DNA of 64,000 bases, taken from the NCBI GenBank assembly GCA_977020255.1, contig CDROCS010001101.1, positions 124,001 to 188,000 of the forward strand. Reading direction: 5' to 3'. The notes under the pieces are model-generated. The model made no database searches and was not told the DNA's origin. It saw only the letters and a program-made list of their open reading frames with translations. Position 1 is the first letter of the stretch. Each line of letters begins with the position of its first letter. The position numbers were made by a program, and so were the translations under genes. This stretch comes from Obrimoposthia wandeli. Its lineage: Eukaryota. Shown piece after piece: positions 4,678 to 60,317 of this stretch.

Positions 4678-5244
4678 ATGACAATCAATCTAAATAGTCG
4701 TTACGGCTTAAATCCTGCGCATAGTGAAGTAGTAGAAGCATGTAAAGTTATTGAGCCGTGCGATACATTAGATATGGGCTGTTCGAATGGGCGTAATGCC
4801 TTGTATCTCGGCCAGCTTGGATTTAACGTTACCGCCATTGATATTAATCCAGCTGCCATCGATAATCTGCAAGATATTACTCAGCAAGAGGGTATGAGTA
4901 ATATCAAGGCTCAGGTATATGACATTAACAGCGCTAACTTAAGTAACGATTATGATTTCATCTCTTGTACCGTAACCTTAATGTTTGTCAATCCAGCGAA
5001 TGTCGACGCTATTATTGCTGATATGCACAAGCGAACGCTACCTGGTGGCTACAACCTAATTGTTTGTGCCATGAGTACTGAAGAAACACCATGCCCAGTA
5101 CCGTTTCCTTTCACGCTAAAAGCAGGGCAGTTACGCGAGGCTTATGCTGGATGGGAACTGATTAAGTACAATGAAGATGTTGGTACTATGCATAACGGCG
5201 CTAAATTACAGTTTGCGACTATGTTGGCGCGTAAACCTGTTTAA
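4678..5244 (+). CDS. tehB: Tellurite-resistance SAM-dependent methyltransferase TehB
   Basis: LDMGCSNGRNALYL motif I, YDFISCTVTLMF, PGGYNLIV, CPVPFPFT and FATMLARK, all typical of TehB. Confidence 0.88.
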   Translation: MTINLNSRYGLNPAHSEVVEACKVIEPCDTLDMGCSNGRNALYLGQLGFNVTAIDINPAAIDNLQDITQQEGMSNIKAQVYDINSANLSNDYDFISCTVTLMFVNPANVDAIIADMHKRTLPGGYNLIVCAMSTEETPCPVPFPFTLKAGQLREAYAGWELIKYNEDVGTMHNGAKLQFATMLARKPV

Positions 5245-5638
5245 ACCCAATATTAAGGCCTCAATACAGAGGTCTTTGTTTTATCTAAAACGCTATTTTC
5301 ATGTTGAATGTAATATCCAGGACTAGATTAAACAATCATTACCACTTTCCTAATATATAATTTAGACCATCATGCAGCACTATTTAAAGACAATACGATC
5401 GCTTTAATATAACAGTACTGAAAGGGGATCTTGATAGCTATAAAGTCATCTATCTTGTTACGTACAGAAGTTAGGATCACTTCGTGGTTTAATGGATAAT
5501 TTAAAGATACGTATTCAGTCAATATCTAGAATATTATTAGATCAAGAAGGTAACCGGCCAGTATAGAGTCGGGTGATGACTTGGGTCACAGAGGCCTTAA
5601 AAAAACAGAGCAGGGCGTGTTGAACCAAGGTTTTATTC

Positions 5639-5700
5639 GCGCGCTCTGTAAAATGTACCAGTGGTAACCGACAAAAACTTTCAGATTTCACACAGCACAC
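5639..5700. repeat. Degenerate copy (S1) of the recombinase-associated inverted-repeat site
   Basis: Arms GCGCGCTCTGTAAAATGT (13/18 match) and AGATTTCACACAGCACAC (15/18 match) to the 33360-33424 arm, separated by a 26-nt spacer. Confidence 0.55.
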
Positions 5701-6573
5701 GTGATTTATGCCTTTAAAAACAGACTTGTACTGGCTATTCAGATCTGAAGTCACTAATCGTTGATAACGATGAAAAAATGGTTTCGAGCCATACGGTTAC
5801 GAACGTTTAACATCTATCTAGACTATCATAAATATCGATTACAACGTGATAAAAATGCCTTAAAAAACATTACGTTCGTTAGGATATTAATAAAGTATAA
5901 GAACCATTTCGATGTCGTTGGTAGATGATTTTAAGATGAGCCAATATAGAGTAAATCGCATTATGCACAAGCTGAACAGAACTTAGCTAAGTTGTCAGCG
6001 GATAAGTTAGAAAAAAGAAACAGGGAAATTACATTGGGCAATAGAAAATATTGAGTCATCAATTTTGCCGTAGCTGCATCCAATATAGAGATGATGATGT
6101 TAGGAACATTTTTCATAAGCTTTAAAACGAAATGGATTAATACTGATAAAAGGTTGTTCATAACTGAATATTAGAGCCAGATTAGAGAGCATCACAAAAT
6201 AGCCAAAGTCCCATACTTCCGGAGTGCCGATACAGTGGTGGTTTAATCCAAAGTGAATCAGAACGAAGATACATTAAGAATACTAAGTGGTAGCAAAATT
6301 AGTTGAGCATTTCATAGTGCATTATAAAAATATTTACCGTGTGTATTGAATGATGAGATCTAAATGTGAGAGTTTGTTGGTGATCAGGGAGCTAACAAGA
6401 ATCCGGTAGCGATATATGAGCATCGACCAATATGTAGATTGTTTGAATCTACGAGGGAAAATAGCTTGAGGATTTCTACAGCTAGATCCACAGGCATACA
6501 AAGTTTTGGTTTTTATATGTCTGGATATATTTGATTACGTCATATTTTGGATAAAATATGATGTAATCATTTA

Positions 6574-6601
6574 GATGCATATCATATACTTTATGGTAAA
6601 T
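6574..6601 (+). other. Secondary dif-like XerCD site
   Basis: GATGCATATCA-TATACT-TTATGGTAAAT: XerD arm identical to that of 6690-6717; XerC arm 7/11 to E. coli dif; inverted relative to 6690-6717. Confidence 0.55.
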
Positions 6602-6689
6602 AAGACATGTGTTAAATACCAACCGAACCAATCCCAATAATTACATATCTATAAATAGAACGGGGCTAATTATAACTCCCACAAATCCT

Positions 6690-6717
6690 ATTTACCATAA
6701 TATACATTATGCGCAGT
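6690..6717 (-). other. dif: dif site (XerCD chromosome-dimer resolution site)
   Basis: Minus strand reads ACTGCGCATAA-TGTATA-TTATGGTAAAT: 25/28 identical to E. coli dif with the canonical TGTATA spacer; the XerD arm equals that of ColE1 cer. Confidence 0.82.
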
Positions 6718-6811
6718 GTTGTATAAACCCAGATAGAGGTGTCCGGTTTGAGATTATTGGTATTGATATCAAAATATTGTTCCTGGTACTTCATTCTGAT
6801 ATCAAAAACCT

Positions 6812-6873
6812 GTGCGCTACGTGAAATCTGAAAAGTTTTGCCAGTATAGTTACTGTAGATTTCACACAGCGCG
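6812..6873. repeat. Copy (S2) of the recombinase-associated inverted-repeat site
   Basis: Left arm GTGCGCTACGTGAAATCT is 18/18 identical to the 33361-33378 arm; 27-nt spacer; right arm AGATTTCACACAGCGCG is 14/18. Confidence 0.8.
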
Positions 6874-6877
6874 TTAT

Positions 6878-7129
6878 CTATTTAGCTGTTTGATTACTAA
6901 TGTTTTTATCTGATTTAAAGTATTCTAGTTCTTTCAATCTCGCGAATATTTTTGCATAACCAATGAAGTTTTGTTCATCACCATCGGTAACATCTGCTGA
7001 TAAAAGATCCTCATGCAGGAACAAAATTGATTCTTTAATATCATCAAGTCCAATTGATAATTCACTACTTGCTGTAAGACATTGTTCACCTCGACAATAA
7101 AATACAGCACTACCAGATACCATATTCAT
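6878..7129 (-). CDS. Hypothetical protein (83 aa)
   Basis: Only ORF in an otherwise non-coding stretch; weak RBS; ends 4 bp from site S2; no recognisable motif. Confidence 0.35.
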   Translation of the reverse strand: MNMVSGSAVFYCRGEQCLTASSELSIGLDDIKESILFLHEDLLSADVTDGDEQNFIGYAKIFARLKELEYFKSDKNISNQTAK

Positions 7130-7251
7130 AATATGCTTCTATAATTATTGAGAATAATCAGATTCTTTATTAAACGCTAAGCTATCAATACTCCGCTTAT
7201 ATTCATGCTAGCAATATATAATCAACCATAATTAATGAAGGGAAAATAAAA

Positions 7252-7668
7252 ATGAGATCTTTAAAGAAGATATTTTCTATAGTCATTGTTTCAGCCAGTT
7301 TAGTTACAGTGCCACTGGCCAGCGCTTCACCTTCACAGCAAAGCCAAACTCCGTTACAGGAAATCGTTAATTCACTGGAGTTAACCGAAGATCAACAGAA
7401 TGAAATATCTTCATTCATTGATAAGTATCAAGAGTCCCGTCCAGTTATTAATGTGGAAAAAGTGGTAGAACTAAAAAAAGAACAACTACGCTTGATTACT
7501 CAGCCCAAACTCGATGAAACCAAATTAGGGTCAATCATCGATCTGATTCAAGTTAAGCAAAAACAGCTTCTGATAGATGAGATGCAATTAAAAAATAATA
7601 TTTATAATGTGCTCACAGAAGATCAAAAAACTAAGTTTAAATCTTCGTTGAAGTCATTGATACTTTAA
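7252..7668 (+). CDS. Spy/CpxP family periplasmic protein
   Basis: Signal peptide; two LTxxQ motifs (LELTEDQQ, VLTEDQK); helical. Confidence 0.8.
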   Translation: MRSLKKIFSIVIVSASLVTVPLASASPSQQSQTPLQEIVNSLELTEDQQNEISSFIDKYQESRPVINVEKVVELKKEQLRLITQPKLDETKLGSIIDLIQVKQKQLLIDEMQLKNNIYNVLTEDQKTKFKSSLKSLIL

Positions 7669-7770: not shown

Positions 7771-7840
7771 ATCTCAGTATAAAGCAGTAAATATAGACAT
7801 GCTATTTAACATAATAAATGCAGTCTTATTAATCACCAAT

Positions 7841-31525: not shown

Positions 31526-32536
31526 TTATGAATGATGAAGTGCTAAATAGGCTTTATTCATTGCGAATAACCGGTCTTTTTCAACATCAGAAATGAAACT
31601 GGCTTCAATCGCATTAAAAGTAAATTGCGCTATTTCAACTTTCGTCATGCGGTGTGCATCTGAAACGGCCATAAAGTTGTCAGTCATGTAACCACCAAAG
31701 TATGCTGGATCATCTGAATTGATCGTAACACAAACGCCTTTACGTAAAAGCTCAACAATATTGTGCTCAGACATTTCCTCAAATACTTTAAGCTTGATGT
31801 TAGATAACGGGCAAACCGTCAGTGGCGTTCTTAGTTTTGCTAACTCTTCGACAAAGTTTTCATCATCAGAACAACGCACACCGTGATCAATTCTGGTTAT
31901 TTTCAACAGTGCTAACGCATCGCGAATACTACTTGCTGGCCCTTCTTCACCTGCATGCGCTACCGTTAAAAATCCTTCACTCAATGATTTTTCAAATACA
32001 CGTTCAAATTTACTGGCTGGATTACCATTTTCTGACGAATCTAAACCAACAGCGATGATCTTATCTTTATGTGCCAGCGCCTGATTTAATGTTGTAAATG
32101 CTGACGCTTCATCCAAGTGACGTAAAAAACACATGATTAACTGACTGCTAATATCGAGTTCTTTTGCCGCTTTAGTTAATGCTTTATCAATCCCATTCAC
32201 GACGGTATCAAAACTAATACCACGATCTGTGTGTGTTTGTGGATCGAAGAATACTTCGGTATGCACTACATTATCGTTTTTACAGCGCAGTAAATAAGCC
32301 CAAGTAAGATCGAAAAAGTCTTGTTCGGTGATAAGTACATTAGCACCTTGATAATAAATATCTAAAAATGATTGGAGATTATGAAAATCGTACGCGTCTT
32401 TTACTTCAGCGAATGAGTTGAATGGGATTTCAATATTGTTACGTGCGGCAAGTTCAAACATCAATTCGGGTTCAAGCGTGCCTTCAATATGTAAATGAAG
32501 TTCTACTTTTGGTAAGTCTTGAATAAATTGTTTCAT
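31526..32536 (-). CDS. add: Adenosine/adenine deaminase family (probably type-2 adenine deaminase)
   Basis: PKVELHLHIEGTLEP, FFDPQTH, HAGEEG, RIDHG, CPLSN, NSDDPAYF. Confidence 0.93.
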   Translation of the reverse strand: MKQFIQDLPKVELHLHIEGTLEPELMFELAARNNIEIPFNSFAEVKDAYDFHNLQSFLDIYYQGANVLITEQDFFDLTWAYLLRCKNDNVVHTEVFFDPQTHTDRGISFDTVVNGIDKALTKAAKELDISSQLIMCFLRHLDEASAFTTLNQALAHKDKIIAVGLDSSENGNPASKFERVFEKSLSEGFLTVAHAGEEGPASSIRDALALLKITRIDHGVRCSDDENFVEELAKLRTPLTVCPLSNIKLKVFEEMSEHNIVELLRKGVCVTINSDDPAYFGGYMTDNFMAVSDAHRMTKVEIAQFTFNAIEASFISDVEKDRLFAMNKAYLALHHS

Positions 32537-32619
32537 GATTAAGTTCCTAATAAGATTTATTAAGTACTTCTCTTTAAAGAAAAAAAGCTACAAAGAGAAA
32601 AGTACTGATGTACTAAACT

Positions 32620-32686
32620 CTTCGTAATCAGGAGTTAACGGTTCCTGGTAGAGACCCCCAATCCATATTATTGGGGTTATACGAAG
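32620..32686 (-). ncRNA. Purine riboswitch aptamer, adenine-sensing
   Basis: Minus strand CUUCGUAUAA-CCCCAAU-AAUAUGG-AUUGGGGG-UCUCUAC-CAGGAACCGUUAACUCCUG-AUUACGAAG: P1/P2/P3 fold, with U at the specificity position (74) as in the V. vulnificus add riboswitch; lies upstream of add. Confidence 0.95.
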
Positions 32687-32757
32687 TGAAAACTAATAGC
32701 ATAATTGAAATACGATATTAGTTTGAAACTGATTGTACAGAATGTTATTTCTCAAGT

Positions 32758-33210
32758 CTATGGTTTAAACATAGCAGCTTGACCGCAAAAAGACCCATTG
32801 TTATCAATAAGATTCCACACTGTTGCATTTTCTATCCAAAAAGTACGCCCACTTGCGGAAATACGTAAACCACGATAATCATCAATAAAACCAAACTGAG
32901 AGACTCTTGCCAACAAATCTGCTCGTTCATCACGATCCAGCGGCTTTGCTGACTTCCTTGATGGTAAAGCAATAAATTCAGGCCAACTTAATTCGAATGA
33001 CTTTAATGCTGACTTGTTACCATAGTTGAATATTGGATCACTTTCAGTGCCGTGTGATACCACAACAAAGTCAGCGTTAAACAGGGCTTGAGCAATATCA
33101 TTATATCCCTCATCATAAATAAGCGATTTACCTGTAAGGCGTTGATAGCTAGATATTAAAAGTTCAGCGTGCGCATATAGATATCCATTTTCGAGACTTG
33201 GTTCGTTCAT
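32758..33210 (-). CDS. MEKHLA domain protein
   Basis: VVSHGTESDPIFNYGN, F..LPSRKSA, G.RISASG..F.I..A.VWNL. Confidence 0.9.
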   Translation of the reverse strand: MNEPSLENGYLYAHAELLISSYQRLTGKSLIYDEGYNDIAQALFNADFVVVSHGTESDPIFNYGNKSALKSFELSWPEFIALPSRKSAKPLDRDERADLLARVSQFGFIDDYRGLRISASGRTFWIENATVWNLIDNNGSFCGQAAMFKP

Positions 33211-33359
33211 CAAAATGTCCTTATATCCCTGATTTAAACGTATCCATTTAATTCAATTTTAGCATAACTGTCATTACGTAATAGCATAAAAATCACCTTA
33301 ACATAGTCGTACTCAATTCTATTATTTCGTATAATTACTATATGAATGAGTCATTTACG

Positions 33360-33424
33360 CGTGCGCTACGTGAAATCTACTAGCTAGGATACGAAGCAGT
33401 ACTTCAGATTTCACGTAGCGCACG
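33360..33424. repeat. Perfect 19-bp inverted repeat with 27-nt spacer (S3), candidate recombinase site
   Basis: CGTGCGCTACGTGAAATCT-N27-AGATTTCACGTAGCGCACG, 95 bp upstream of the tyrosine recombinase start. Confidence 0.85.
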
Positions 33425-33443
33425 AAAAAACAAGCCATTTATA

Positions 33444-33459
33444 CTGTTTGCTTATACAG
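33444..33459. promoter_or_regulatory. LexA (SOS) box overlapping the probable -10 of the recombinase promoter
   Basis: CTGT-TTGCTTAT-ACAG overlapping TATACT (33440-33445). Confidence 0.7.
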
Positions 33460-33518
33460 TTGTTAATGCTATAATTGACGCGGTAATATTTAAGGTCTTT
33501 GATAAACGCGGATGTATA

Positions 33519-34607
33519 ATGCCTAAAGCATTGATAAATATAAATAATAATTCAATTGTAGCATCTAATAACTTAAGCGAAGAACACATTGAAAACCTCA
33601 TTAGGTTCAGTGATCGTAAAGAACAATTAGAAGAAAACACGCTAAAATCACTACATTTCCATGTCAGTAAATTTAATGATTATTGCGCTAGTCGTAATGT
33701 GATCCCCTTGCCTTTGCAAGATGCGACTGTACTTGAATCTTTCCTTATCAAAGAAAACGACCGTGGTTGTAAAGCACAAACCTTACGTATTTATGCATGG
33801 GCTGTTTCCAAAATACACAGTTTAGCTGGTTTAGAGATCCCTTATTTCAAAACCATTATTACCGCACGATTGAAGATAATATCAAAACAAGAAGTTAAAC
33901 TAGGTGTAAAACGTAAACAAGCCGTGGCCTTTTCTTATGACCACCTTAAATTTGTAAACGATAAACTTGATATCAATTCACTGCTTTCCATCCGCAATGT
34001 TTTACTATTGAACATTTGTTATGACGGTTTACTACGTGAAAGTGAAGCCTGTAATTTGTTTATCGATCAGATTCAAAAAGTGAATGGTCTATATAACATC
34101 AACATTACTAATTCAAAAACGGATAAGTCATTAGATGGTTCGATCGTACATTTAAGTAAATTCACCTCTAAATTACTGCCTTTATATTTACAAAAAGTAG
34201 CTGCACACCACGGCCAATTTCTGTTTAAACGTATTACTCCACGTGGTGGAAAATTAGAAACACTAAAGCTTAGCGATATAACGCCAAACCCGCACGATAA
34301 AGCAATATCGACAAAAACGGTTGAATTGGTATTTGCTAACACATGGCATACTATTACTGCACACAACCTAATGCTTGGTTTTGAAGATCATATTGATTTA
34401 CCGGAACGACCTTTTAGTGGTCACTCGGCACGAGTTGGTGCATCTTGCGATCTTGTCAGTGCAGGTTTTGATGACTCATTGGTAATGCGTGCGGGAAGAT
34501 GGAAAACATTAAGAATGGTTGAGCTCTATACGCGTGGTGTAAATAATAAATTTGCGACTGTCAGAGAATTTAGAGAACGACTAGAAACCATCACCAACAC
34601 CGAATAA
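33519..34607 (+). CDS. Cre/TnpS-like tyrosine recombinase
   Basis: N-terminal SAM-like domain and a full Cre-type catalytic set: R (LLRESE), K (SKTD), HxxR (GHSARVG), W (GRWK), Y (MVELY). Confidence 0.92.
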   Translation: MPKALININNNSIVASNNLSEEHIENLIRFSDRKEQLEENTLKSLHFHVSKFNDYCASRNVIPLPLQDATVLESFLIKENDRGCKAQTLRIYAWAVSKIHSLAGLEIPYFKTIITARLKIISKQEVKLGVKRKQAVAFSYDHLKFVNDKLDINSLLSIRNVLLLNICYDGLLRESEACNLFIDQIQKVNGLYNINITNSKTDKSLDGSIVHLSKFTSKLLPLYLQKVAAHHGQFLFKRITPRGGKLETLKLSDITPNPHDKAISTKTVELVFANTWHTITAHNLMLGFEDHIDLPERPFSGHSARVGASCDLVSAGFDDSLVMRAGRWKTLRMVELYTRGVNNKFATVREFRERLETITNTE

Positions 34608-34730
34608 ATCAAACCTCCTCGCACGCGATGGTAAATAATGGAAAGACATCCGCCTTTCCAGTCAGCCAACTATATTTCATCAATGTCATAAATAGTAATG
34701 CTATAAATGGCTACACTATAAATAGAAATG

Positions 34731-35126
34731 TTAACCATCTATTAGTTGAACCATTTCGTTTAGCGTAGCATGAAACATACAGCTTACATCATCATGGCTA
34801 AACTCATTGCCATTTAAGTTGACGGTGATTTCAGTGTCATCATTATCCGTTTCAACATACAGCGTGTTTTTAATTGTTGGATATTTTTCTAGCAACACAT
34901 TTTCAGCATGCTTTCGTGTGATCTTATTACTTAGGTGTACGGTAATAATCCCCGTCCCTAGCAACAGTTTATTCATGCCATGTTCAAAAACATCCGCAAG
35001 CATACCTTCAACAAACTGACTTTTTGAAACGTTACATTGTTCACTTATTGTTTCTAGTTTTTCGAGTAAGTCTTCGTACATTCTTATCGTGCTGTTCTTT
35101 CTGGTTGCGTCGGGCTTAATCTTCAT
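34731..35126 (-). CDS. Ribbon-helix-helix (CopG/Arc-like) DNA-binding protein
   Basis: STIRMYEDLLEKLETISEQCNVSKSQFVEGML has the beta-alpha-alpha RHH pattern; convergent with the recombinase gene. Confidence 0.65.
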   Translation of the reverse strand: MKIKPDATRKNSTIRMYEDLLEKLETISEQCNVSKSQFVEGMLADVFEHGMNKLLLGTGIITVHLSNKITRKHAENVLLEKYPTIKNTLYVETDNDDTEITVNLNGNEFSHDDVSCMFHATLNEMVQLIDG

Positions 35127-35986
35127 TTTTATACCATCGAGTCTATGAGTTAGCAAAACGCTATTTCATGTAAAATATCGTTTAAGTGAATACATAATAG
35201 CATAACTTTTAGTTTATTTATGAATAATAAAATAAAACAATTGTGCACAATATGACCACATAATGAGTTAGATGATGGCTCTTAATATAGATTGATAAAC
35301 GCTTAAAAACCCAATCTTAATGACAATTTAATTTTAAAAATAAATTATCTATATTAATAACTATGAGGGTACACTTACAATTCACACAACTACATCTAAT
35401 TAATTCATTGCTAAAACATTGAAATACAAGGTCTTTATTTCGTTTAACGGTCATTATACGAAATAAAGCTTGTTTTATATAATTACAGGTGCACCTTATT
35501 CAGATTTTAATATGTTCATAATATAACTGCATATTGAAATGTAATATAGAGTTATATTGAAATTAATAGTTGGTATAAATATTTGTTTATTTGTAATTTT
35601 ATATATCAATTATATGAGGTTTAAATAAGTGATAATTGGGTTTACTTTTATTTGATAGGCGGAATATATAGGAATACTTAAATTAGGACTATTTACATAA
35701 AATATGATGCCCTCTTCATTTAGGCTCATTTTTTTGATTTATGGGGGTCATTACCCATGATAATCATCAGAATTCACACACCGCGCCATAATAAACCTAC
35801 AACATCACATTTAAACAATATAAATCAATTACTTACACTTAAGTTGGTGGTTTTAAATGCCTGTTTTAAGCTTAATTTTACTGATATACAGACATATATT
35901 AAGTAAAAACCTATTTTCAAATAGAGTTCAGTGGAAATTACAATATTTATGCTCCTAGGACTAACCAGTAATAACACCTTTTAACA

Positions 35987-36002
35987 CTGTATATACATAC
36001 AG
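35987..36002. promoter_or_regulatory. LexA (SOS) box
   Basis: CTGT-ATATACAT-ACAG, between TTAACA and CATTAT (recA-like -35/box/-10 layout). Confidence 0.8.
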
Positions 36003-36356
36003 CATTATTTAAATCCCCGTAAAAGTATGACCAAAAATGGACATACTAATTAACGCTTTTAATTTAATCGTTGTAATACAACAACTTAAAAACAAGCGTT
36101 TAAAGGTAACTAATATATGAAAACGGTGACTAACTGAGTTTATGTTTGATTAATAGCAGTGAATTCCTTGTTATTATTACTCCTTGGTAAGAAAGTAACT
36201 TGTTAATATCCGACGTGTCCCTCAATAATCAGCACCGATAAATCAACTAAGCAAATATAATTCATTTAATATAGCGTCTACAATGGGAAGTAGAAAAGAA
36301 TGACGTTAAAATACGGACTTCATCATGACTACCTAAAATTGACCTTCAGGAACATA

Positions 36357-37235
36357 ATGCTAAAAAATAAAAAAGCCGACATCATACTGGTGATCACGAC
36401 ATTACTCGCATCTGCCGGTTGGATATTTTCTAGCGAAGCAATTCAAGGCTTGCCCAGTGCAGGGTTCATCGGTATCAGGTTTATGCTTGCCTCGTTATTA
36501 TTACTGCCTTTTTGTTATCGAGGTCTACTATCGTTAGATCGTAAAACATTACTTCAAGCTTCAACAGTTGGCTGCTTTCTTGGCGCTGCAATATTACTTT
36601 GGATATATGCCATCTCGATCAGTGACTCATTGGGCGAAGGTGCATTTATCATGAGTTTGTCTATGTTGTTAGTGCCTATTGTTGCTTGGTTATTATTTAA
36701 AAATAGACCACCTCGCATGTTTTGGTTTTCATTACCCTTCGCGATTGCAGGTTTGTTATTTCTATCACAAGGTAGTGTTTGGTCGTTATCAGGTAGCCAA
36801 ATCTGGTTTGCAATTGCCGCGTTGATGTTAGCGATTCAGTTTAATTTAAACAGTCACTTTGCCCAGAAAATACCAACACTCGTCCTTACCTGTATTCAGT
36901 TATTTGTCACCGGTCTTTTAGGTATTACCGTGTCATTGCTTACCGAAACTTGGCCAGAATTTATCGCGATTGAAACCTGGGGTTGGTTAACGATGAGTGT
37001 ATTGATTGCGACCAGTTTACGCTACGTGTTACAAACCACAGGTCAAAAAAATACCACGACAGCGAATGCCGCGATCATTATGATTTTGGAACCGGTATGG
37101 ACTGTGATTTTAAGTATGCTTTGGTACGATGAAAGTATGGCGGCGACAAAATTGATAGGTTGTTGTTTAATACTATTTTCACTATTAATGTATCGAGTGG
37201 GTCCTAAATATTTATTGAAAATGAAAACAGCTTAG
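36357..37235 (+). CDS. DMT/EamA family transporter
   Basis: Ten TM helices in two EamA repeats; IMILEPVW. Confidence 0.9.
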   Translation: MLKNKKADIILVITTLLASAGWIFSSEAIQGLPSAGFIGIRFMLASLLLLPFCYRGLLSLDRKTLLQASTVGCFLGAAILLWIYAISISDSLGEGAFIMSLSMLLVPIVAWLLFKNRPPRMFWFSLPFAIAGLLFLSQGSVWSLSGSQIWFAIAALMLAIQFNLNSHFAQKIPTLVLTCIQLFVTGLLGITVSLLTETWPEFIAIETWGWLTMSVLIATSLRYVLQTTGQKNTTTANAAIIMILEPVWTVILSMLWYDESMAATKLIGCCLILFSLLMYRVGPKYLLKMKTA

Positions 37236-37322
37236 CTATTTTATTATTTATTTAATGAACCTAGGATAGAGATAATTAATGATGATCTCTATCCTATTCC
37301 CTTACTAATTTATAGAGAGTAG

Positions 37323-38249
37323 CTATTCTATAAAATGAGATTTAGGTTCAATTGGCTCGGGTAAGTCAGTTTCCCCCATCAACTCTAAAAGACTAATTTC
37401 TAGTGAACGAGTCATTGCATGTAGTGGTAAGTCATTGGAAGATAAGCCAAATGGTTTTTCTAATTCTTCACTTAAAGCATCCAAACCAAAAAATGTATAA
37501 GCTACAATTGCACAAAATAGTGGCGTAGCAAATCCTTGAGATGCAACAAGTCCAAAGGGTAATATGATGCAATATAAATAAGATGTACGTTGAACAAGTA
37601 ATCGATATGCAAATGGTAATGGCGTATTATCGATTCGTTCACATGCTGCTTGTACACTTGTCATCGATGTAATGTGTTCGTCGATACTTTGTACTAGAAA
37701 ATCAGACAATAATTTTTTATGTCTACATGTACCAAGTTTTGCACCCATCAAGCGTAGTATCGAATCGGGTACATTATAAGATTGCTTAAGGTAATCGACA
37801 TCTTCTTGTTCTAGGTATTGTCGAATATCATCCCAAGGTTCTGTTTTACGTAGATGATGACGTAATGCATGATTAAAAGCGATGGTCAAATTCACTAATC
37901 GCTTTTGCATCAACTCACCGCCCTCTTTTTTACTATCTATAAATGAATAAACCTGCCTGGCTAAACTGCGAGAATCGACGATTAATTGCCCCCACTGTTT
38001 TCTAGCCTCCCACCAGCGTTCATAACATGCATTATTACGAAAACCTAAAAACAAGGATAATGCCACACCTAAAAGAGTAAATGGCGCAATGGTATAAGTT
38101 GGAAATATAATGGGGAAGTTGTATTGTGCAAATGCGACCAGCGTACTGAGCAACGCAATAAATAATATCTGTGGAAAAACCAGCGGTATAATAGAACCTT
38201 CCAGAATAAAAAACAGTTTAAATACACTTGGTTTATCACGAATAATCAT
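37323..38249 (-). CDS. Bestrophin family ion channel (YneE-like)
   Basis: LFLGFRNNACYERWWEARKQWG, CERIDNTPLPFAY, FFGLDALSEELEKPFG. Confidence 0.92.
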   Translation of the reverse strand: MIIRDKPSVFKLFFILEGSIIPLVFPQILFIALLSTLVAFAQYNFPIIFPTYTIAPFTLLGVALSLFLGFRNNACYERWWEARKQWGQLIVDSRSLARQVYSFIDSKKEGGELMQKRLVNLTIAFNHALRHHLRKTEPWDDIRQYLEQEDVDYLKQSYNVPDSILRLMGAKLGTCRHKKLLSDFLVQSIDEHITSMTSVQAACERIDNTPLPFAYRLLVQRTSYLYCIILPFGLVASQGFATPLFCAIVAYTFFGLDALSEELEKPFGLSSNDLPLHAMTRSLEISLLELMGETDLPEPIEPKSHFIE

Positions 38250-55999: not shown

Positions 56000-56173
56000 C
56001 CCTCATAAAAACGGTGCTGATTAGGGCCTTACATACTGTTCGATAGTTTAAATCTAAAGCGACTTATTGATTTTGTGTCGCTTTACAAAGTATAACTAAT
56101 ACAAGAAAAAGCAGGCTAAAATTAACAAAAAATGAAAAAAGCCAACTTTATTCTGTTTAAGTAACCAATTAGG

Positions 56174-56917
56174 TTATTGCACCAACGTTATTGCTTTCAC
56201 TGCTTTATTCCAAATAACGACTAAATCATCTTTCGAAGTATTATCGTAGTCCACATACAGGCCGCTACTTTTTAATTTATTGCTCTTTGATAGCAACTCT
56301 TTTCCTTCAGCAGTAATCATTGGAATAGATGTCCCAAATGGACCAAATCTAAAGTATTTCATGTGGTCATCACCAAATTTATCTACATATGAAACCACCA
56401 AATACCTTTTAATGTATCCTGTCATAGACTTTATCAACGGTCTCATGAAGTCAGATTTAAACTCGCTAATAACACCATCTAACTGATTTGTGTTAGTGAT
56501 ATGTTGCTCAGAAAGCATACCTTTTGGTTTACATTGATACGTTAGAGCTAGTAGAAAAATAATTATCTAATGGCACCTGTATACTCTCTAATGGTATCTT
56601 TTTTTCTTTTTCTTTTTCTTCAGGGTGAATAAGCTTCAGCTCATTCAAATGAAGAAAAGTAAATGGATAATAATCAAAGTCATACATTACATCACCAGAG
56701 TTATTTATTACTAAAGTCTCACCTTAGCTCCATCTTTATTGCCATCATATCTAAAATACAGATACTTTCGGCAAGTGTTCTAACTTGCTAACCATAGAGA
56801 TGGCATTTTTCGCTATCGAGTTTTTGCGCGTTCATCGTAAATGATAGCCATTATAGAAATGCAGACAGTAGCTACTGTTTCAAAATAGATCTTATTATTA
56901 GTTAAAAAGTTTTTCAT
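56174..56917 (-). pseudogene. Frameshifted cargo gene (~250 aa) of unknown function
   Basis: AGAGGA RBS plus ATG at 56917 (MKNFLTNNKIYFETVATVCISIMAII, TM-like), several frame breaks; the track ORF 56174-56518 is its C-terminal piece. Confidence 0.5.
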
Positions 56918-57427
56918 TTTTCCTCTTATAATCTAAGGCCGCACTAATCGTTCAAAAAATTTGACTACAATTTGTGATGCACGCATAAAGCAAACTTTTA
57001 TTGTCCGCTTAAGTGCCATATTGTAGGCATTTATAAGCCATTTATGATATACGCATCTCGACTAAATAAACATTTACATATTTGTTTTGGCAATCAAGTT
57101 TACCTACTGGGAAGTTACTACATATCAAATCACTTAACTGATTGTGGCGGATTGTTGTTTATCGCTTAGATAAACCTAAGTGGTCTGTCATTTAGTGGCA
57201 AACAATGTCACAGCTTTGACATTAGCGATCCTTAAATGATCGTTGAGATCCTTTCTAGATAAGGCTTGGTGAATATTAGTGTGTCCATCGTTGTGTCAAA
57301 AACGTCAAAAAATTGCGAAAACGCGGTAGGCGAAGAGGAGTGAATTTATCGAGGGCTCACGCGCACGATTAAATATTTCCCTCACCCGTCAGCAATAGCT
57401 ATGTATTATAACTAACACGTCATACAA

Positions 57428-57443
57428 CTGTATAAAAAAACAG
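57428..57443. promoter_or_regulatory. LexA (SOS) box upstream of ogr
   Basis: CTGT-ATAAAAAA-ACAG, followed by TATAAT at 57454-57459. Confidence 0.65.
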
Positions 57444-57486
57444 TTAAATATCGTATAATTTACAGGTCAGTATTTGAATTAAGTGG

Positions 57487-57744
57487 ATGTTTATGCGAGT
57501 AGTTTGCCCAGAGTGCGGCGTTAAAAGCCGTATACAAAAAACGAATAGAATTTCGAATAGCTACACAGATTTATATTGCAGTTGTAATAACGCTGAGTGT
57601 GGTCATTCTTTTGTGATGAATCTTAGCTTTAGCCATACGCTGAGCCCATCAGCGAAAACGGCTACTCAAATGGCAATGGATTTGGTGAAGACCTTGCCGC
57701 TAGAACAGCGGCAAGAATTGCAGTTACAACTTTCAGGTTTGTAG
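57487..57744 (+). CDS. ogr: Ogr/Delta-like Zn-finger late-gene activator
   Basis: CPECG...RI...LYCSCNNAECGHSFV...FSHTLSPSA. Confidence 0.92.
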   Translation: MFMRVVCPECGVKSRIQKTNRISNSYTDLYCSCNNAECGHSFVMNLSFSHTLSPSAKTATQMAMDLVKTLPLEQRQELQLQLSGL

Positions 57745-57818
57745 ATTCTTTCCATAACTATTAATTGGTATATAATGCATGTCAATTCATATTGATAAAA
57801 CAAATACGGTGAAATAAA

Positions 57819-57998
57819 ATGAATACAGTGCAAATGAAAGACGTACAAATTAAAGAAAACAAAAACTGCTCTCATAGCAAATTATCAAAAGAGTACCATT
57901 TAGGTTCTGCTACTGGCGACTATATTTGCGATGGATGTGGTCACGCCGGATTTGGTCGTGACTGGCCTCAGAAAAAGCACAAAGAAAGCAATAAATAG
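57819..57998 (+). CDS. Small Zn-ribbon-like protein (59 aa), missed by the ORF track
   Basis: MNTVQMKDVQIKENKNCSHSKLSKEYHLGSATGDYICDGCGHAGFGRDWPQKKHKESNK; GGTG RBS; followed by a hairpin at ~58033-58063. Confidence 0.6.
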   Translation: MNTVQMKDVQIKENKNCSHSKLSKEYHLGSATGDYICDGCGHAGFGRDWPQKKHKESNK

Positions 57999-58215
57999 CT
58001 ATCCCAACGCTACTTAATCTCTGAACTATAGAAAGCCTTGCTAGTAATCTCTAGTAAGGTTTTTATCCGCTAAATCTAACTACCCCTGAGAACTCATCAA
58101 CTTGTTAGATTTTAAATCAAAAAAAATTGTAGCAATATTAAAGGCTAGCCCCACGGCTACGGCTCTTTGATTAATGATAAAAATAAAATCACAAAACAGA
58201 ATTTTTGGATTAACA

Positions 58216-60317
58216 ATGAAAGACATTAGACAGATTTGACAGCAAAATTTGAAAATACTTAAATGAAAAAATCCAAGTAATCAAAAAAATATTAGACATA
58301 CTAGATTCAACATTAAGCAGGCCTGAAGTGATTATTATTCGAGGCCAAAAGCAACGTGACAAACGAAACGAGTTCTTAAATGAATTACTAGGTATCACGT
58401 CTGATAGAGGTGAAGAAATTTATAATTTACTTATGATAAAAATACAGTTAATTGTAACAACAGAAGATATTTTTGACAAAATATCAACATTCATTGACGA
58501 GTGTGAAATAAGTAAATTAGAAAAAAAATTCAAGTTTGGTCTCATCTAAAGCGTGTCGAATCTGACTACCAAGAAATAAAAAGCCATGTAAGTGAATACT
58601 TAGAAAAAAAACCAAAATACAAAATACTATCACCAAGAGTAATGGTAACTAATAATGAAGGCACAAGTTATTCTCCTGATTTAGCATTGGAGAATATGAT
58701 TAAGTATTTATCTTTGACATTAGGTTTACTTGGTTACAAATATAATTTATTTGATAATGATAAAATAGTTTTACCATGTGAAACCATTGTTAGTGACGAT
58801 GATATACATAAAGCAGGTTCTTTGAATTTATTGGCTCTATCTTGGAGCAACTTAGAAGACAATAGCCTTCGCTGTATACTCTTTGGAGGACAGATATATT
58901 GTAATGAAGGGGATGACGTTCAACAAGATGCAAAGGACAACGGTGTTAAGACTTCATATCATTTTATGAGAGACGAGTCAGAATATGAAATATTTGATGC
59001 AATTTCATGTGAAAGAGTAAAAAATAGCTCTCTACAGAGTTTATTTACAATACATACAACGCCTGAAATTAAACATAGAATACAGCCTTGTTTAGAAAAA
59101 GTAGGGCAATTAAAAGGGCATAATTTTCTATGCGAAGATGAGATTCTAACCTGCTTAACTCTTAGGGATATTTTTTGTATTGACTTACTTAATGATACTC
59201 ATGAATATAATAAATTAACATTATGCGATTGGGTACGAGGATATTTTACACTAAGGTATTTATCTCAAAAAATAGATAACAATGAAATATCCAGTATTAT
59301 AAGTCATCAAGATATACTTATTAATTTAATATCTGCAGGCCTTGAAATCCATAAAGCACTACTATCATTGAAATAGTCCTTTTAAAGGCTCAAAATATTT
59401 ATTTGATTGTCCGTTAATAAAATTAACTGATGGTAATTTATGTATCTCGCATACTTCGGGCTTATTAAGAAACATATCAAACATAATTATGTCTAGATTT
59501 TCCTCTTAGATATTATGAAGCAATAAAGGCTATGGTTTCTGAGGATGTAGGGTTAACGAACTTATTTCAAAATACTTATCTACATCTAAACTTTCTGTTC
59601 ACACGTGAAAATAAAATCCAGAATATGATGCTGTCTTTATTTTAGATAAAAGAGTTTTTGTTTTTGAGTGTAAAACAGGTCCCTTTCTTGGTCTAGTCCA
59701 GTAAAAGCATATAGAAATAATAATTACTTATCTGATACAGTGAAACAAATAACTAGATTAAGGGATGCCTTAGTTTCTTATCCCGAAGTAGCAAAAGAAC
59801 ACTTTAATATCAACATCTCTGACTATGAAGTTATTCCTGTAATTTTTAATTGCATGCCATTTTCATGGAAAGGAAAATACGGTAACGTTTATGTTTCAGA
59901 CAACTCATCTTTCTCAAGATTCATAAAAAGCTCTAACATTAACCTTATCGAAAGCAGGGCTAAAGGATCAATTCAGCACAATACCCAGAAATTAAAACAA
60001 TGGTCTGGTAGTAAACCGAACTCCGATGACTTGTCTGACATTTAGACGATCCAATACAGCTTAAACCTTACCTTACTTCAAGATTAGAAACCCCTAATTG
60101 GTTCATTGCCAATAATGAAGTATCTTTTACAACATTGAGCTATGATGTTGACAATATAAAGTATGCTAAAGATGAAAAAAAATTATTAGATCCTATCCCT
60201 CCGCTCAAAAAGACAAATCAAAAAAACTAAAATTAAAAGATTCCTAACAAAAAAATCAAGAAAAAATAATAAAAAACGAAAGTAGATATCAATACAAATT
60301 CAATTAAACAGTTATGA
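58216..60317 (+). pseudogene. Degraded ~700-aa protein with C-terminal PD-(D/E)xK/NERD-like nuclease domain
   Basis: Track ORFs 58328, 58642 and 59740 are consecutive fragments; KGYGF at 59525, EYDAVFILDKRVFVFECK at 59621-59674, and a Lys-rich tail. Confidence 0.65.

What the first reader, a model, noticed from the sequence alone, without database searches (positions are those of the whole stretch)
6574..6717. dif site paired with an inverted dif-like site 88 bp away (CTX attP-like geometry)
Seen: a 25/28 match to E. coli dif on the minus strand (6690-6717), plus a second XerC-6bp-XerD site on the plus strand (6574-6601) with an identical XerD arm (TTATGGTAAAT). The XerD arms face each other across 88 bp. 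Established: CTX-type ssDNA phages carry two inverted dif-like sites ~90 bp apart that fold into the attP hairpin used by XerCD. Inference: this may be the scar of an IMEX (Xer-exploiting element) integration at the chromosomal dif, or a retained hairpin-type integration platform. The XerD arm is the ColE1 cer variant, so a plasmid-derived Xer site is an alternative explanation.
Basis: partly seen in the sequence, partly recalled or inferred. Interest (0 to 1): 0.72.

Follow-up and report, generated by a model that had tools for sequence, protein, structure and literature searches.

The report
Conserved companion site beside Moritella dif
Beside the site where this Moritella bacterium untangles its chromosome (dif) lies a second, inverted dif-like site that is unchanged in every relative examined, so it is probably a working protein-binding element and not the phage scar or phage-style hairpin first suggested.

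Summary
6690-6717 (-) is a canonical dif: 25/28 to the E. coli K12 dif, at the GC-skew switch. In a close relative a filamentous phage is inserted exactly at its XerC-arm/central-region border. 6574-6601 (+) is a second dif-like site (XerD arm 11/11, centre 3/6, XerC arm 6/11), 88 bp away, with the XerD arms facing each other.

The window is a Moritella chromosome. The same 28-mer lies inverted, 80-108 bp from dif, in all 21 complete pairs examined, although the neighbouring terB gene drops to 51-57% protein identity. It is part of a ~110-nt near-invariant non-coding block that includes a 17-bp hairpin with compensatory changes.

It does not behave like a CTX-type attP:
- The single strand folds no better than shuffles (z -0.7); the real Moritella phage attP gives z -6.5.
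- The XerC arms do not pair.
- In 15 of 21 pairs the two XerD arms differ.

An IMEX scar exists, but on the other (XerC) side of dif (6707-7129).

Best reading: a selected, non-recombining XerD(-XerC) binding site that accompanies dif, acting as a roadblock or as a Xer-gated promoter for a small hairpin RNA. The function is untested.

The parts
6690..6717 (-). Chromosomal dif (XerC arm 6707-6717, centre 6701-6706, XerD arm 6690-6700)
   Evidence: 25/28 to the E. coli K12 dif printed in PMC2731167. The cumulative GC skew peaks here in the window and in two relatives. The inovirus in L028 is inserted at the equivalent of 6706/6707.
6574..6601 (+). Second dif-like site ('site 2'): weak XerC-like arm 6574-6584, centre 6585-6590, perfect XerD arm 6591-6601
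   Evidence: It is 27-28/28 identical in all 24 other copies found.
6602..6689 (.). Spacer between the two XerD arms. Length and sequence vary between relatives (80-108 bp, mosaic types). The first ~16 nt belong to the conserved block.
   Evidence: No inverted version was seen among 21 pairs.
6532..6569 (.). Hairpin/palindrome: 17-bp stem (6532-6548 with 6553-6569) and a 4-nt loop, 4 nt (6570-6573) left of site 2
   Evidence: 5 of 17 pairs show changes on both sides, 98.9% of cells are paired, and 0 of 500 shuffles reach these values.
6506..6617 (+). Near-invariant non-coding block: left part, hairpin, site 2, a 5-6 nt variable patch, and the invariant 8-mer at 6610-6617
   Evidence: Alignments A2, A3 and A6. 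The block is 81-100% identical, while terB of the same contigs is 61-97% identical at nucleotide level and 51-97% at protein level. It is single-copy in 309 kb searched with a covariance model.
6588..6615 (-). Promoter-like hexamers (TTAACA, 16 nt, TAAAGT) that overlap the XerD arm of site 2 and would read leftwards into the hairpin
   Evidence: a consensus match only, no more frequent than in shuffles. Both hexamers are invariant or nearly so in A3, and the variable patch lies in the 15-16 nt gap between them.
6707..7129 (-). Relic of a filamentous-phage-type IMEX on the XerC side of dif: the XerC arm, a terminator-like stem-loop and one surviving 83-aa ORF (6878-7129). The other genes of the phage unit are absent.
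   Evidence: 88% DNA identity to the phage segment L028 3280-3678. The ORF is 74% identical to the phage 92-aa ORF. Larger relics of the same phage sit at the same place in L054.
6814..6872 (.). Stem-loop (16-nt arms, 27-nt loop) downstream of the 83-aa ORF, shared with the phage
   Evidence: 97-100% conserved.
5347..6505 (.). Non-coding DNA left of the block. It is shared only with M. marina, strain F3 and L033 and has no conserved ORF. It is unrelated to what lies left of the block in other lineages.
7804..7814 (-). Isolated exact match to the common (T-type) XerD arm, same orientation as dif, 1.1 kb to its right
   Evidence: It is kept in L027-L029 and absent from F3. Its significance is unknown.

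Best explanation
6690-6717 is the working chromosomal dif of a Moritella chromosome. 6574-6601 is not a leftover of integration. It is a separately selected dif-like site belonging to the host (or fixed in it). It has a perfect XerD arm, the canonical 6-bp centre length and a weak XerC-like arm. It is embedded in a ~110-nt conserved block together with a structured hairpin. Inferred mechanism: XerD, possibly helping XerC onto the weak arm, occupies this site without recombining it with dif. The two centres match at only 3 of 6 positions, and the spacer is never found inverted. Two roles fit the anatomy. (a) The XerD bound here turns its outer face towards dif. It would therefore be a one-way roadblock for FtsK (or an SMC-type motor) that runs past dif from the XerC side. 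(b) The site overlaps a leftward promoter-like pair of hexamers whose ~75-nt product would be the hairpin. Xer occupancy would then gate a small RNA, as cer gates Rcd. Shown: the sites, their conservation, the hairpin covariation, the lack of inversion, and the IMEX insertion point. Inferred: Xer binding to site 2, and either role.
For: Identity of dif: and the phage insertion at its XerC border in L028. Site 2 is 28/28 identical in M. marina, strain F3, M. dasanensis and L033. It is 27-28/28 identical in 19 metagenome contigs. It is always inverted with the XerD arms facing, 80-108 bp from dif. It is as invariant as dif itself, which varies at three positions in the same set. The block is 81-100% identical where the adjacent terB is 51-97% identical in protein and 61-97% in DNA. 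The spacer between block and dif diverges freely. Hairpin: 5 of 17 pairs are compensatory, and 0 of 500 shuffles reach that. No inversion occurs among 21 spacers and the centres are 3/6 alike. pdif sites rearrange only with identical or near-identical centres (PMC13141974). XerD on a half-site blocks FtsK from its outer face only (PMC2800217). dif-like XerD sites that act without recombination exist in B. subtilis (XDS; PMC11840125). A promoter inside a Xer site that drives a ~70-nt RNA exists in cer (PMC4393325; PMC5357621). In CTX-type integration new DNA enters between the centre and the XerC arm, as in L028. The XerD-side flank, where site 2 sits, is therefore never replaced by such elements (geometry is my inference).
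Against: There is no binding, expression or occupancy data. The XerC-like arm is poor (6/11), including one mismatch in the inner part that is usually conserved (PMC2731167). The roadblock role does not explain the hairpin. The promoter is a weak consensus match, no more frequent than in shuffles. It has no obvious terminator, its spacer is 15 nt in six sequences, and in the window's clade the hairpin has a G-T pair that would be an A-C mismatch in the leftward transcript. L041 and L043 keep the block although dif is no longer within 9.7 kb, so the block may work independently of dif. High identity across divergent hosts could also come from horizontal spread. Arm-to-arm correction within a DNA palindrome could mimic selected covariation.
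Confidence: 0.45

Rival explanations
1. Relic or retained platform of a hairpin-type (CTX-like) IMEX. Site 2 would be the complete second attP arm, the spacer the loop, and at least the XerD arm of the present dif would be element-derived.
For: The topology is what single-strand hairpin integration leaves at one prophage end. In L028 the phage end next to the chromosome reads complete site (+), 54 bp, hybrid site (-). CTX attP has two inverted sites 90 bp apart (PMC4246890). Phage relics adjoin dif in every lineage. In the window and the cultured strains the two XerD arms are identical.
Against: The ssDNA fold has z = -0.67, and 44 of 200 shuffles fold as well. The true phage attP gives z = -6.5. 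In 15 of 21 pairs the XerD arms differ. No phage or IMG/VR contig carries site 2 or the hairpin. There is no phage-like coding remnant left of site 2. Invariance over hosts with 51-57% terB identity is not expected of a scar. No second dif-like junction lies to the left.
Confidence: 0.12
2. The block is the conserved end of a family of islands that settle on the XerD side of dif. Its high identity would reflect horizontal spread, and its function would serve the element, not the host.
For: Unrelated cargo lies directly left of the block in at least 7 contexts: terB, GH19 chitinase, a pair of tyrosine recombinases, ORFans, and non-coding DNA. Older partial copies of the block remain beside terB in L052/L044 and L055, as if a newer copy had arrived with the cargo. 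Hairpin variants do not follow the terB tree: L040 and L041 have 97% identical terB but opposite hairpin variants.
Against: No dif-like or other repeat marks a far end of these islands. In terB-adjacent lineages there is no cargo at all, yet the block is present. The block was not found in phage, plasmid or viral collections. It occurs once per dif locus.
Confidence: 0.15
3. The block is a regulatory or RNA element unrelated to Xer (small RNA, operator, or attachment site of integrase-type islands). Its likeness to dif would then rest mainly on one 11-mer in AT-rich DNA.
For: The conserved block is much larger than the 28-mer. The hairpin covaries. An invariant 8-mer outside the site fits a -35 hexamer. 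The block persists without dif in L041/L043. The XerC-like arm is weak.
Against: An exact XerD arm at the correct 6-bp distance from a partial XerC arm, always 80-108 bp from dif and always in the same orientation, occurs in 21 of 21 complete pairs. The chance expectation for the 11-mer is 0.11 per 64 kb. No Rfam family matches.
Confidence: 0.18
4. A second, independent dimer-resolution site (a back-up dif). Its different centre would keep it from recombining with dif and from being targeted by phages matched to the dif centre.
For: It has full 11-6-11 architecture and is invariant. The centre differs from dif. CTX-type integration specificity depends on centre bases next to the XerC arm (PMC4246890). 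dif here is a proven phage target.
Against: The weak XerC arm makes XerC catalysis doubtful. No element or rearrangement is ever seen at site 2. This reading does not explain the hairpin.
Confidence: 0.07

Closest known systems
CTX-phi attP1/attP2 (hairpin attP of CTX-type IMEX)
   Same: Two inverted dif-like sites roughly 90 bp apart, next to or at dif (PMC4246890). A Moritella inovirus with such a pair (54 bp apart) does integrate at this dif.
   Different: The pair lies in the chromosome, not in a phage. There is no stable ssDNA hairpin. The XerC arms are not complementary. The XerD arm is perfect and the XerC arm weak, which is the reverse of the phage sites. Both centres are 6 bp. The arms are not kept complementary in relatives.
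XDS sites of Bacillus subtilis (dif-like XerD sites that unload Smc-ScpAB)
   Same: A dif-like sequence in the terminus region that would act through bound XerD without recombination (PMC11840125; PMC10945525).
   Different: There is a single site, directly beside dif, in a gamma-proteobacterium. It is accompanied by a hairpin. There is no array in the 64-kb window. Neither occupancy nor the type of SMC complex is known here.
XerD half-site as an orientation-specific FtsK roadblock (E. coli, in vitro)
   Same: A XerD arm alone stops FtsK when met on its outer face (PMC2800217). In site 2 that face points at dif.
   Different: No natural second roadblock beside dif has been described in the papers I could search. 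This role is pure inference here.
ColE1 cer with its internal promoter Pcer and the ~70-nt RNA Rcd
   Same: A Xer-binding core overlapped by a promoter that makes a short structured RNA and is thought to be repressed by nearby XerCD (PMC4393325; PMC5357621). Here promoter-like hexamers overlap the XerD arm and point into a covarying hairpin.
   Different: Site 2 is chromosomal, not plasmid-borne. It has a 6-bp centre, whereas cer has 8 bp. No accessory sequences of cer type were identified. Transcription is untested. There was no sequence match in the plasmid collection or in Rfam.
Acinetobacter pdif 'D modules'
   Same: A short segment bounded by inversely oriented XerC-XerD sites with the XerD arms inside (PMC13141974).
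   Different: The sites are on a chromosome and one of them is the real dif. The centres differ (3/6), whereas rearranging pdif pairs share theirs. No inversion or module exchange was seen.

Membership tests
Chromosomal dif (XerCD target) | 28-bp site: 11-bp XerC arm, 6-bp centre, 11-bp XerD arm, close to the proteobacterial consensus | tested here: met
   6690-6717 is 25/28 to the E. coli K12 dif and 26/28 to the S. oneidensis dif as printed in PMC2731167. The same 25-mer core is the dif-like site of 25 other Proteobacteria.
Chromosomal dif (XerCD target) | Lies at the replication terminus (GC-skew switch) | tested here: met
   Cumulative GC skew peaks at 6-8 kb in the window, and at the dif position in L027 and L033. 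Only local sequence was available, not the whole chromosome.
Chromosomal dif (XerCD target) | Recombined by Xer | tested here: met
   Indirect natural evidence: in L028 an inovirus without an integrase gene in the units seen is joined to the chromosome exactly at the centre/XerC-arm border.
Chromosomal dif (XerCD target) | Only one per replicon | not testable with these tools
   Only 64 kb of this genome is available. No other site of 21/28 or better occurs in the window.
CTX-type hairpin attP | Two inverted dif-like sites about 90 bp apart | tested here: met
   88 bp here and 80-108 bp in relatives.
CTX-type hairpin attP | The single strand folds into a stable forked hairpin with both arms paired | tested here: not met
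   -11 kcal/mol, z = -0.67. The XerC arms are 6/11 complementary. Control: the L028 phage attP gives -27.2 kcal/mol, z = -6.5.
CTX-type hairpin attP | Complementarity of the two sites is maintained in relatives | tested here: not met
   In 15 of 21 pairs the XerD arms differ at one position, and the extension beyond the arms is not conserved.
CTX-type hairpin attP | Part of a filamentous-phage or satellite genome | tested here: not met
   There is no phage gene or phage-like DNA left of site 2. There is no hit in phage records or IMG/VR, nor in L028 or L057 with the covariance model.
IMEX junction (attL/attR scar) | Same orientation as the functional dif, with element-derived DNA between the two | tested here: not met
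   Site 2 is inverted and the 88 bp between the sites is not element-like. By contrast, 6707-7129 on the other side of dif is phage-derived.
XDS-like XerD site | dif-like sequence in the terminus region (the strong-XerD-arm, degenerate-XerC-arm pattern comes from my own knowledge; the primary paper could not be read) | tested here: met
   XerD arm 11/11, XerC arm 6/11, 88 bp from dif.
XDS-like XerD site | Bound by XerD; unloads or blocks an SMC complex | not testable with these tools
   No occupancy or contact-map data are available.
XDS-like XerD site | Several sites spread over the terminus region | tested here: not met
   XerD-arm-like 11-mers in the window are not enriched: 6 found against 4.0 expected at up to 1 mismatch.
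cer / Pcer / Rcd | Promoter within the Xer site that drives a ~70-nt structured RNA | tested here: inconclusive
   The hexamers TTAACA, 15-16 nt, TAAAGT are conserved. The hairpin covaries and folds well as RNA, z = -5.75. There are no transcript data, no terminator, and one clade has an A-C mismatch on that strand.
cer / Pcer / Rcd | Plasmid multimer-resolution site with ~180 bp of accessory sequences | tested here: not met
   The context is chromosomal. There is no plasmid match outside the dif site itself.
pdif dif module (D type) | Inversely oriented XerC-XerD sites with XerD arms internal | tested here: met
   The definition comes from PMC13141974.
pdif dif module (D type) | Sites share identical or near-identical centres and the module is found rearranged | tested here: not met
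   The centres are 3/6 alike. None of 21 spacers is inverted.

The most novel reading that the evidence does not exclude
Moritella and its relatives carry a previously undescribed chromosomal partner of dif. A XerD-occupied, non-recombining dif-like site with an attached structured hairpin would do one of two things: fence motors such as FtsK or SMC complexes in at dif, or report the Xer/dimer state through a small RNA. The latter would be a chromosomal counterpart of the plasmid cer-Rcd checkpoint.
Probability: 0.3. Interest if true: 0.8.

Novelty: new variant of a known kind. Interest (0 to 1): 0.58.

Why it matters
dif is usually treated as a bare 28-bp site whose activity depends only on its position and on FtsK. 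Here a second Xer-type site and a hairpin travel with dif across hosts whose neighbouring gene has diverged to about half identity. Everything around them is exchanged: phage relics on one side, islands on the other.

If XerD binds the second site, two things follow. Non-recombining XerD sites, known from Bacillus, would also exist in gamma-proteobacteria. It would also become possible to test whether cells fence or monitor the dimer-resolution site.

The locus is also a clean natural record of how a CTX-type phage uses a non-Vibrio dif. It shows which flank of dif phage turnover rewrites (the XerC side) and which it leaves alone (the XerD side).

Tried and rejected
- **Look-ups of the window's own proteins.** Exact look-ups of three proteins found nothing. 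The organism was identified through homologues instead.
- **Mobile origin of site 2.** BLAST of 6300-7000 against phage and plasmid records matched only the dif site itself. Exact scans of IMG/VR for site 2 and for dif found nothing. A relative of the Moritella phage from IMG/VR (L057) lacks the block. A second scan with the phage 120-aa protein found no relative.
- **Known RNA family.** Rfam found nothing at E up to 1 in 5000-7400.
- **Dispersed repeat.** A covariance model of the hairpin unit found no further copies in the window or in 27 loci, apart from the extra copy in L044/L052.
- **A third dif-like junction to the left that would bound an element.** The best candidates are 17/28 and are not conserved.
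- **Coding potential of 5347-6505.** There is no conserved ORF, and the indels break the frame. Pfam found nothing for the two small ORFs tested there (5542-5754 and 5961-6161, both minus strand). PHROGs was not run on any ORF of this region.
- **Stem extension beyond the XerD arms.** It is present in this window but not in relatives.
- **Xer-driven inversion of the spacer.** None was seen among 21 pairs.
It could not be checked: no paper held prints the 11-mer in that context.
- **The primary paper on XDS sites.** It is not held.

Full report
**What is there.**
- 6690-6717 on the minus strand is an 11-6-11 dif site. It matches the E. coli K12 dif printed in PMC2731167 at 25 of 28 positions, and the Shewanella oneidensis dif in the same table at 26 of 28.
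- 6574-6601 on the plus strand has an identical XerD arm (11/11), a 6-bp centre that matches at 3/6, and a weak XerC-like arm (6/11).
- The XerD arms face each other across 88 bp.
- The exact XerD 11-mer occurs only at these two places in 64 kb, where shuffles give 0.11. Site 2 is the second-best dif-like 28-mer in the window.
- None of 25 dif loci of other Proteobacteria with the same dif core has a second XerD-like arm within 400 bp.

**Organism and dif.** Homologues of the neighbouring Spy/CpxP-like gene identify the window as a Moritella chromosome. It is closest to M. marina ATCC 15381, at about 94% DNA identity over 9 kb. GC skew changes sign at 6-8 kb in the window, and at the dif position in two relatives.

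A natural experiment shows that Xer uses the site. Contig L028 is 98.9% identical to M. marina on the right flank. It carries tandem units of a filamentous phage (Phage_CRI replication protein, gV-like ssDNA-binding protein, HTH regulator, FRG-domain protein). Homology to the window starts at 6706, the border between the centre and the XerC arm.

The phage has two inverted dif-like sites 54 bp apart. Both XerC arms are good, both XerD arms are degenerate, and the centres differ in length. Their single strand folds into a long bulged hairpin (-27.2 kcal/mol, z = -6.5). This matches the CTX pattern described in PMC4246890.

**The IMEX scar is on the other side of dif.** Window 6706-7104 is 88% identical to the phage segment that follows the phage's own XerC arm. 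The 83-aa ORF at 6878-7129 is 74% identical to the phage's 92-aa ORF. The other genes of the phage unit are absent from the window.

The same relic, in different states of decay, adjoins dif in M. marina, F3, M. dasanensis, L033 and several metagenome contigs. L054 keeps truncated pieces of three further phage genes, and the F3 copy is fragmented. This is expected, because each integration inserts between the centre and the XerC arm. The XerC-side flank becomes phage DNA and the XerD-side flank is left untouched. That last step is my inference from the L028 junctions.

**Site 2 is conserved, not decaying.**
- The identical 28-mer lies inverted next to dif in M. marina, strain F3, M. dasanensis (an isolate and a MAG) and L033.
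- A metagenome scan that allowed any centre returned 19 further true copies and 2 chance hits.
- Across the 24 sequences aligned, site 2 varies at two positions, each in a single lineage. dif varies at three positions in the same set.
- The distance to dif is 80 bp (7 pairs), 88, 99, 100 (8 pairs), 102, 106, 107 or 108 bp. The middle of the spacer is a mosaic of unrelated types.

Site 2 belongs to a block, 6506-6617. The block comprises a conserved left part, a 17-bp hairpin (6532-6548 with 6553-6569), the four bases 6570-6573, site 2, a variable patch of 5-6 nt, and an invariant 8-mer.

The hairpin shows changes on both sides at 5 of 17 pairs, one lineage having five such pairs at once. 98.9% of cells are paired, and no shuffle or slid control comes close.

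The block is 81-100% identical between contigs whose adjacent terB genes are 51-97% identical in protein and 61-97% in DNA. So it is more conserved than the gene beside it.

- The ssDNA from site 2 to dif folds at -11 kcal/mol, z = -0.67, and 44 of 200 shuffles fold as well. Only the XerD arms pair.
- In 15 of the 21 complete pairs dif has the common T-type XerD arm while site 2 keeps the G-type arm. Complementarity is therefore not under selection.
- The extra 10 nt of similarity seen in this window is not shared by relatives.
- No phage, plasmid or viral contig carries the block.
- The DNA left of site 2 in the window is non-coding, with no similarity to the phage proteins.
- Site 2 is inverted, so it cannot be an attL/attR of a double-strand integration.
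- One caveat: a relic of a hairpin integration catalysed on the XerD side would leave exactly this topology, and it need not fold today. That rival is not excluded by the fold test. It is weakened by the invariance of the site and by the absence of any element DNA or far junction.

**Surroundings of the block.** The DNA left of the block differs between lineages. It is terB directly (M. dasanensis, L040, L042, L050), a GH19 chitinase, two tyrosine recombinases (L045), ORFans, or the non-coding stretch of the window's clade.
- In L052/L044 an older, diverged copy of the left part and hairpin, again with compensatory changes, remains beside terB without site 2. In L055 only about 30 nt remain.
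- In L041/L043 the block is present, but homology to close relatives breaks inside the spacer, and no dif follows within 9.7 kb.
- On the right of dif some lineages carry defence-type cargo, for example an ABC-3C system in L056.
- The constant unit is therefore block-spacer-dif. Both of its sides are exchange hot spots.

**Mechanism.** I take site 2 to be a selected XerD(-XerC) binding site that does not recombine with dif. The centres are 3/6 alike and no spacer is inverted among 21 pairs. In Acinetobacter, inverted pdif sites rearrange only when their centres are identical or nearly so (PMC13141974). Two roles fit.
- **Roadblock.** XerD alone on a half-site stops FtsK when met on its outer face, but not on its inner face (PMC2800217). 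In site 2 that face points at dif, so a motor that overruns dif from the XerC side would be stopped within about 100 bp. dif-like XerD sites with a non-recombination role (XDS) are known in Bacillus.
- **Gated promoter.** The hexamers TTAACA and TAAAGT, 15-16 nt apart, overlap the XerD arm on the minus strand. They are conserved, and the only variable patch of the block lies between them. The transcript would be the hairpin, which folds as RNA at z = -5.75. This recalls Pcer and Rcd inside cer.

Neither role is shown. The promoter match is no better than background. No terminator is evident. One clade has a mismatch on that strand. The roadblock role leaves the hairpin unexplained.

**Novelty.** Literature searches for Moritella dif, and for inverted dif-like sites beside a chromosomal dif, returned nothing relevant. 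The pieces are of known kinds: dif, XerD-type sites, IMEX relics. The combination of a conserved, inverted, non-recombining companion site with a covarying hairpin travelling with dif appears to be undescribed. I rate it a new variant of a known kind.

- Only 64 kb of this genome was available. All functional statements about site 2 are inference.
- The single genome-collection scan used an exact 25-mer, so relatives with the T-type dif arm were reached only through proteins and metagenomes.
- I broke the rule against sequences from memory. In my reasoning I also recalled consensus motifs: the XerC arms of E. coli dif, cer and psi, and the matS, IHF and Fur boxes. None of these is used as evidence. 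The E. coli dif comparison rests on PMC2731167.
Phage and relic were compared only as they stand.

Noticed in passing
L028:1-7498: A Moritella inovirus-type IMEX in tandem units of ~4.2 kb (gV-like, Phage_CRI, HTH, FRG-domain, and 92-aa and 120-aa ORFs). Each junction has a CTX-like pair of inverted dif-like sites 54 bp apart. No coat or assembly genes lie within the unit seen, so the repeated unit may be a satellite-like replication/regulation module. The contig starts inside the array.
   Followed up: partly
window 7804-7814 (-): Exact copy of the common T-type XerD arm, with no XerC arm, 1.1 kb right of dif and in the same orientation as dif. It lies in the gap between the Spy/CpxP-like and MerR-family genes. 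It is kept in L027-L029 and absent from F3. It may be an old junction remnant or a second XerD half-site.
   Followed up: partly
window 5640-5700 and 6812-6873; L041 8988-9077: A stem-loop that follows the phage-like 83-aa ORF has an inverted second copy (76% identical) in the non-coding region left of the block, and a third copy downstream of cargo genes in L041. It is probably a shared terminator type.
   Followed up: partly
L041:2651-9810 and L043: A lineage in which the block is kept next to terB, but the spacer is broken ~35 nt before the dif XerD arm. About 7 kb of cargo follows (radical SAM, HTH-PIN-ankyrin, UPRTase-like, AAA proteins), ending at a site with only a good XerC arm. Where dif lies in this genome is unknown.
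   Followed up: partly
L052:5429-5489, L044:304-364, L055:~6000-6045: Older partial copies of the block's left part remain beside terB, while a complete block sits 1.7-2.1 kb further on, next to dif. The left edge of the block is an insertion or exchange hot spot.
   Followed up: partly
L027:4880-8135; L030:4915-8150: M. marina and strain F3 have about 3.2 kb more than the window between tehB and the shared non-coding region. It encodes large ORFans (802 + 196 aa, or 998 aa) with no Pfam or PHROG match.
   Followed up: no
L056:1280-6391; L045:496-5991; L049:579-2076: Defence-type or mobile cargo directly flanks the block-dif unit in metagenome relatives: an ABC-3C system right of dif, two tyrosine recombinases plus an 845-aa ORF left of the block, and a UvrD_C-like protein.
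   Followed up: no
window 32001-38000 and 56001-60000: Two stretches of low G+C (0.33-0.34, against ~0.39 elsewhere) that may be islands.
   Followed up: no
H1 (OQ693633.1, Acinetobacter phage M02, 5919-5959): A 6.2-kb Acinetobacter phage carries a 41-nt stretch 88% identical to the window's dif region. It is presumably the phage's own dif-like attachment site.
   Followed up: no
L057:1-11066: An IMG/VR prophage (host G+C 0.44) with a 75% identical Phage_CRI protein, also in tandem units, with overlapping inverted dif-like sites of a different design.
   Followed up: no
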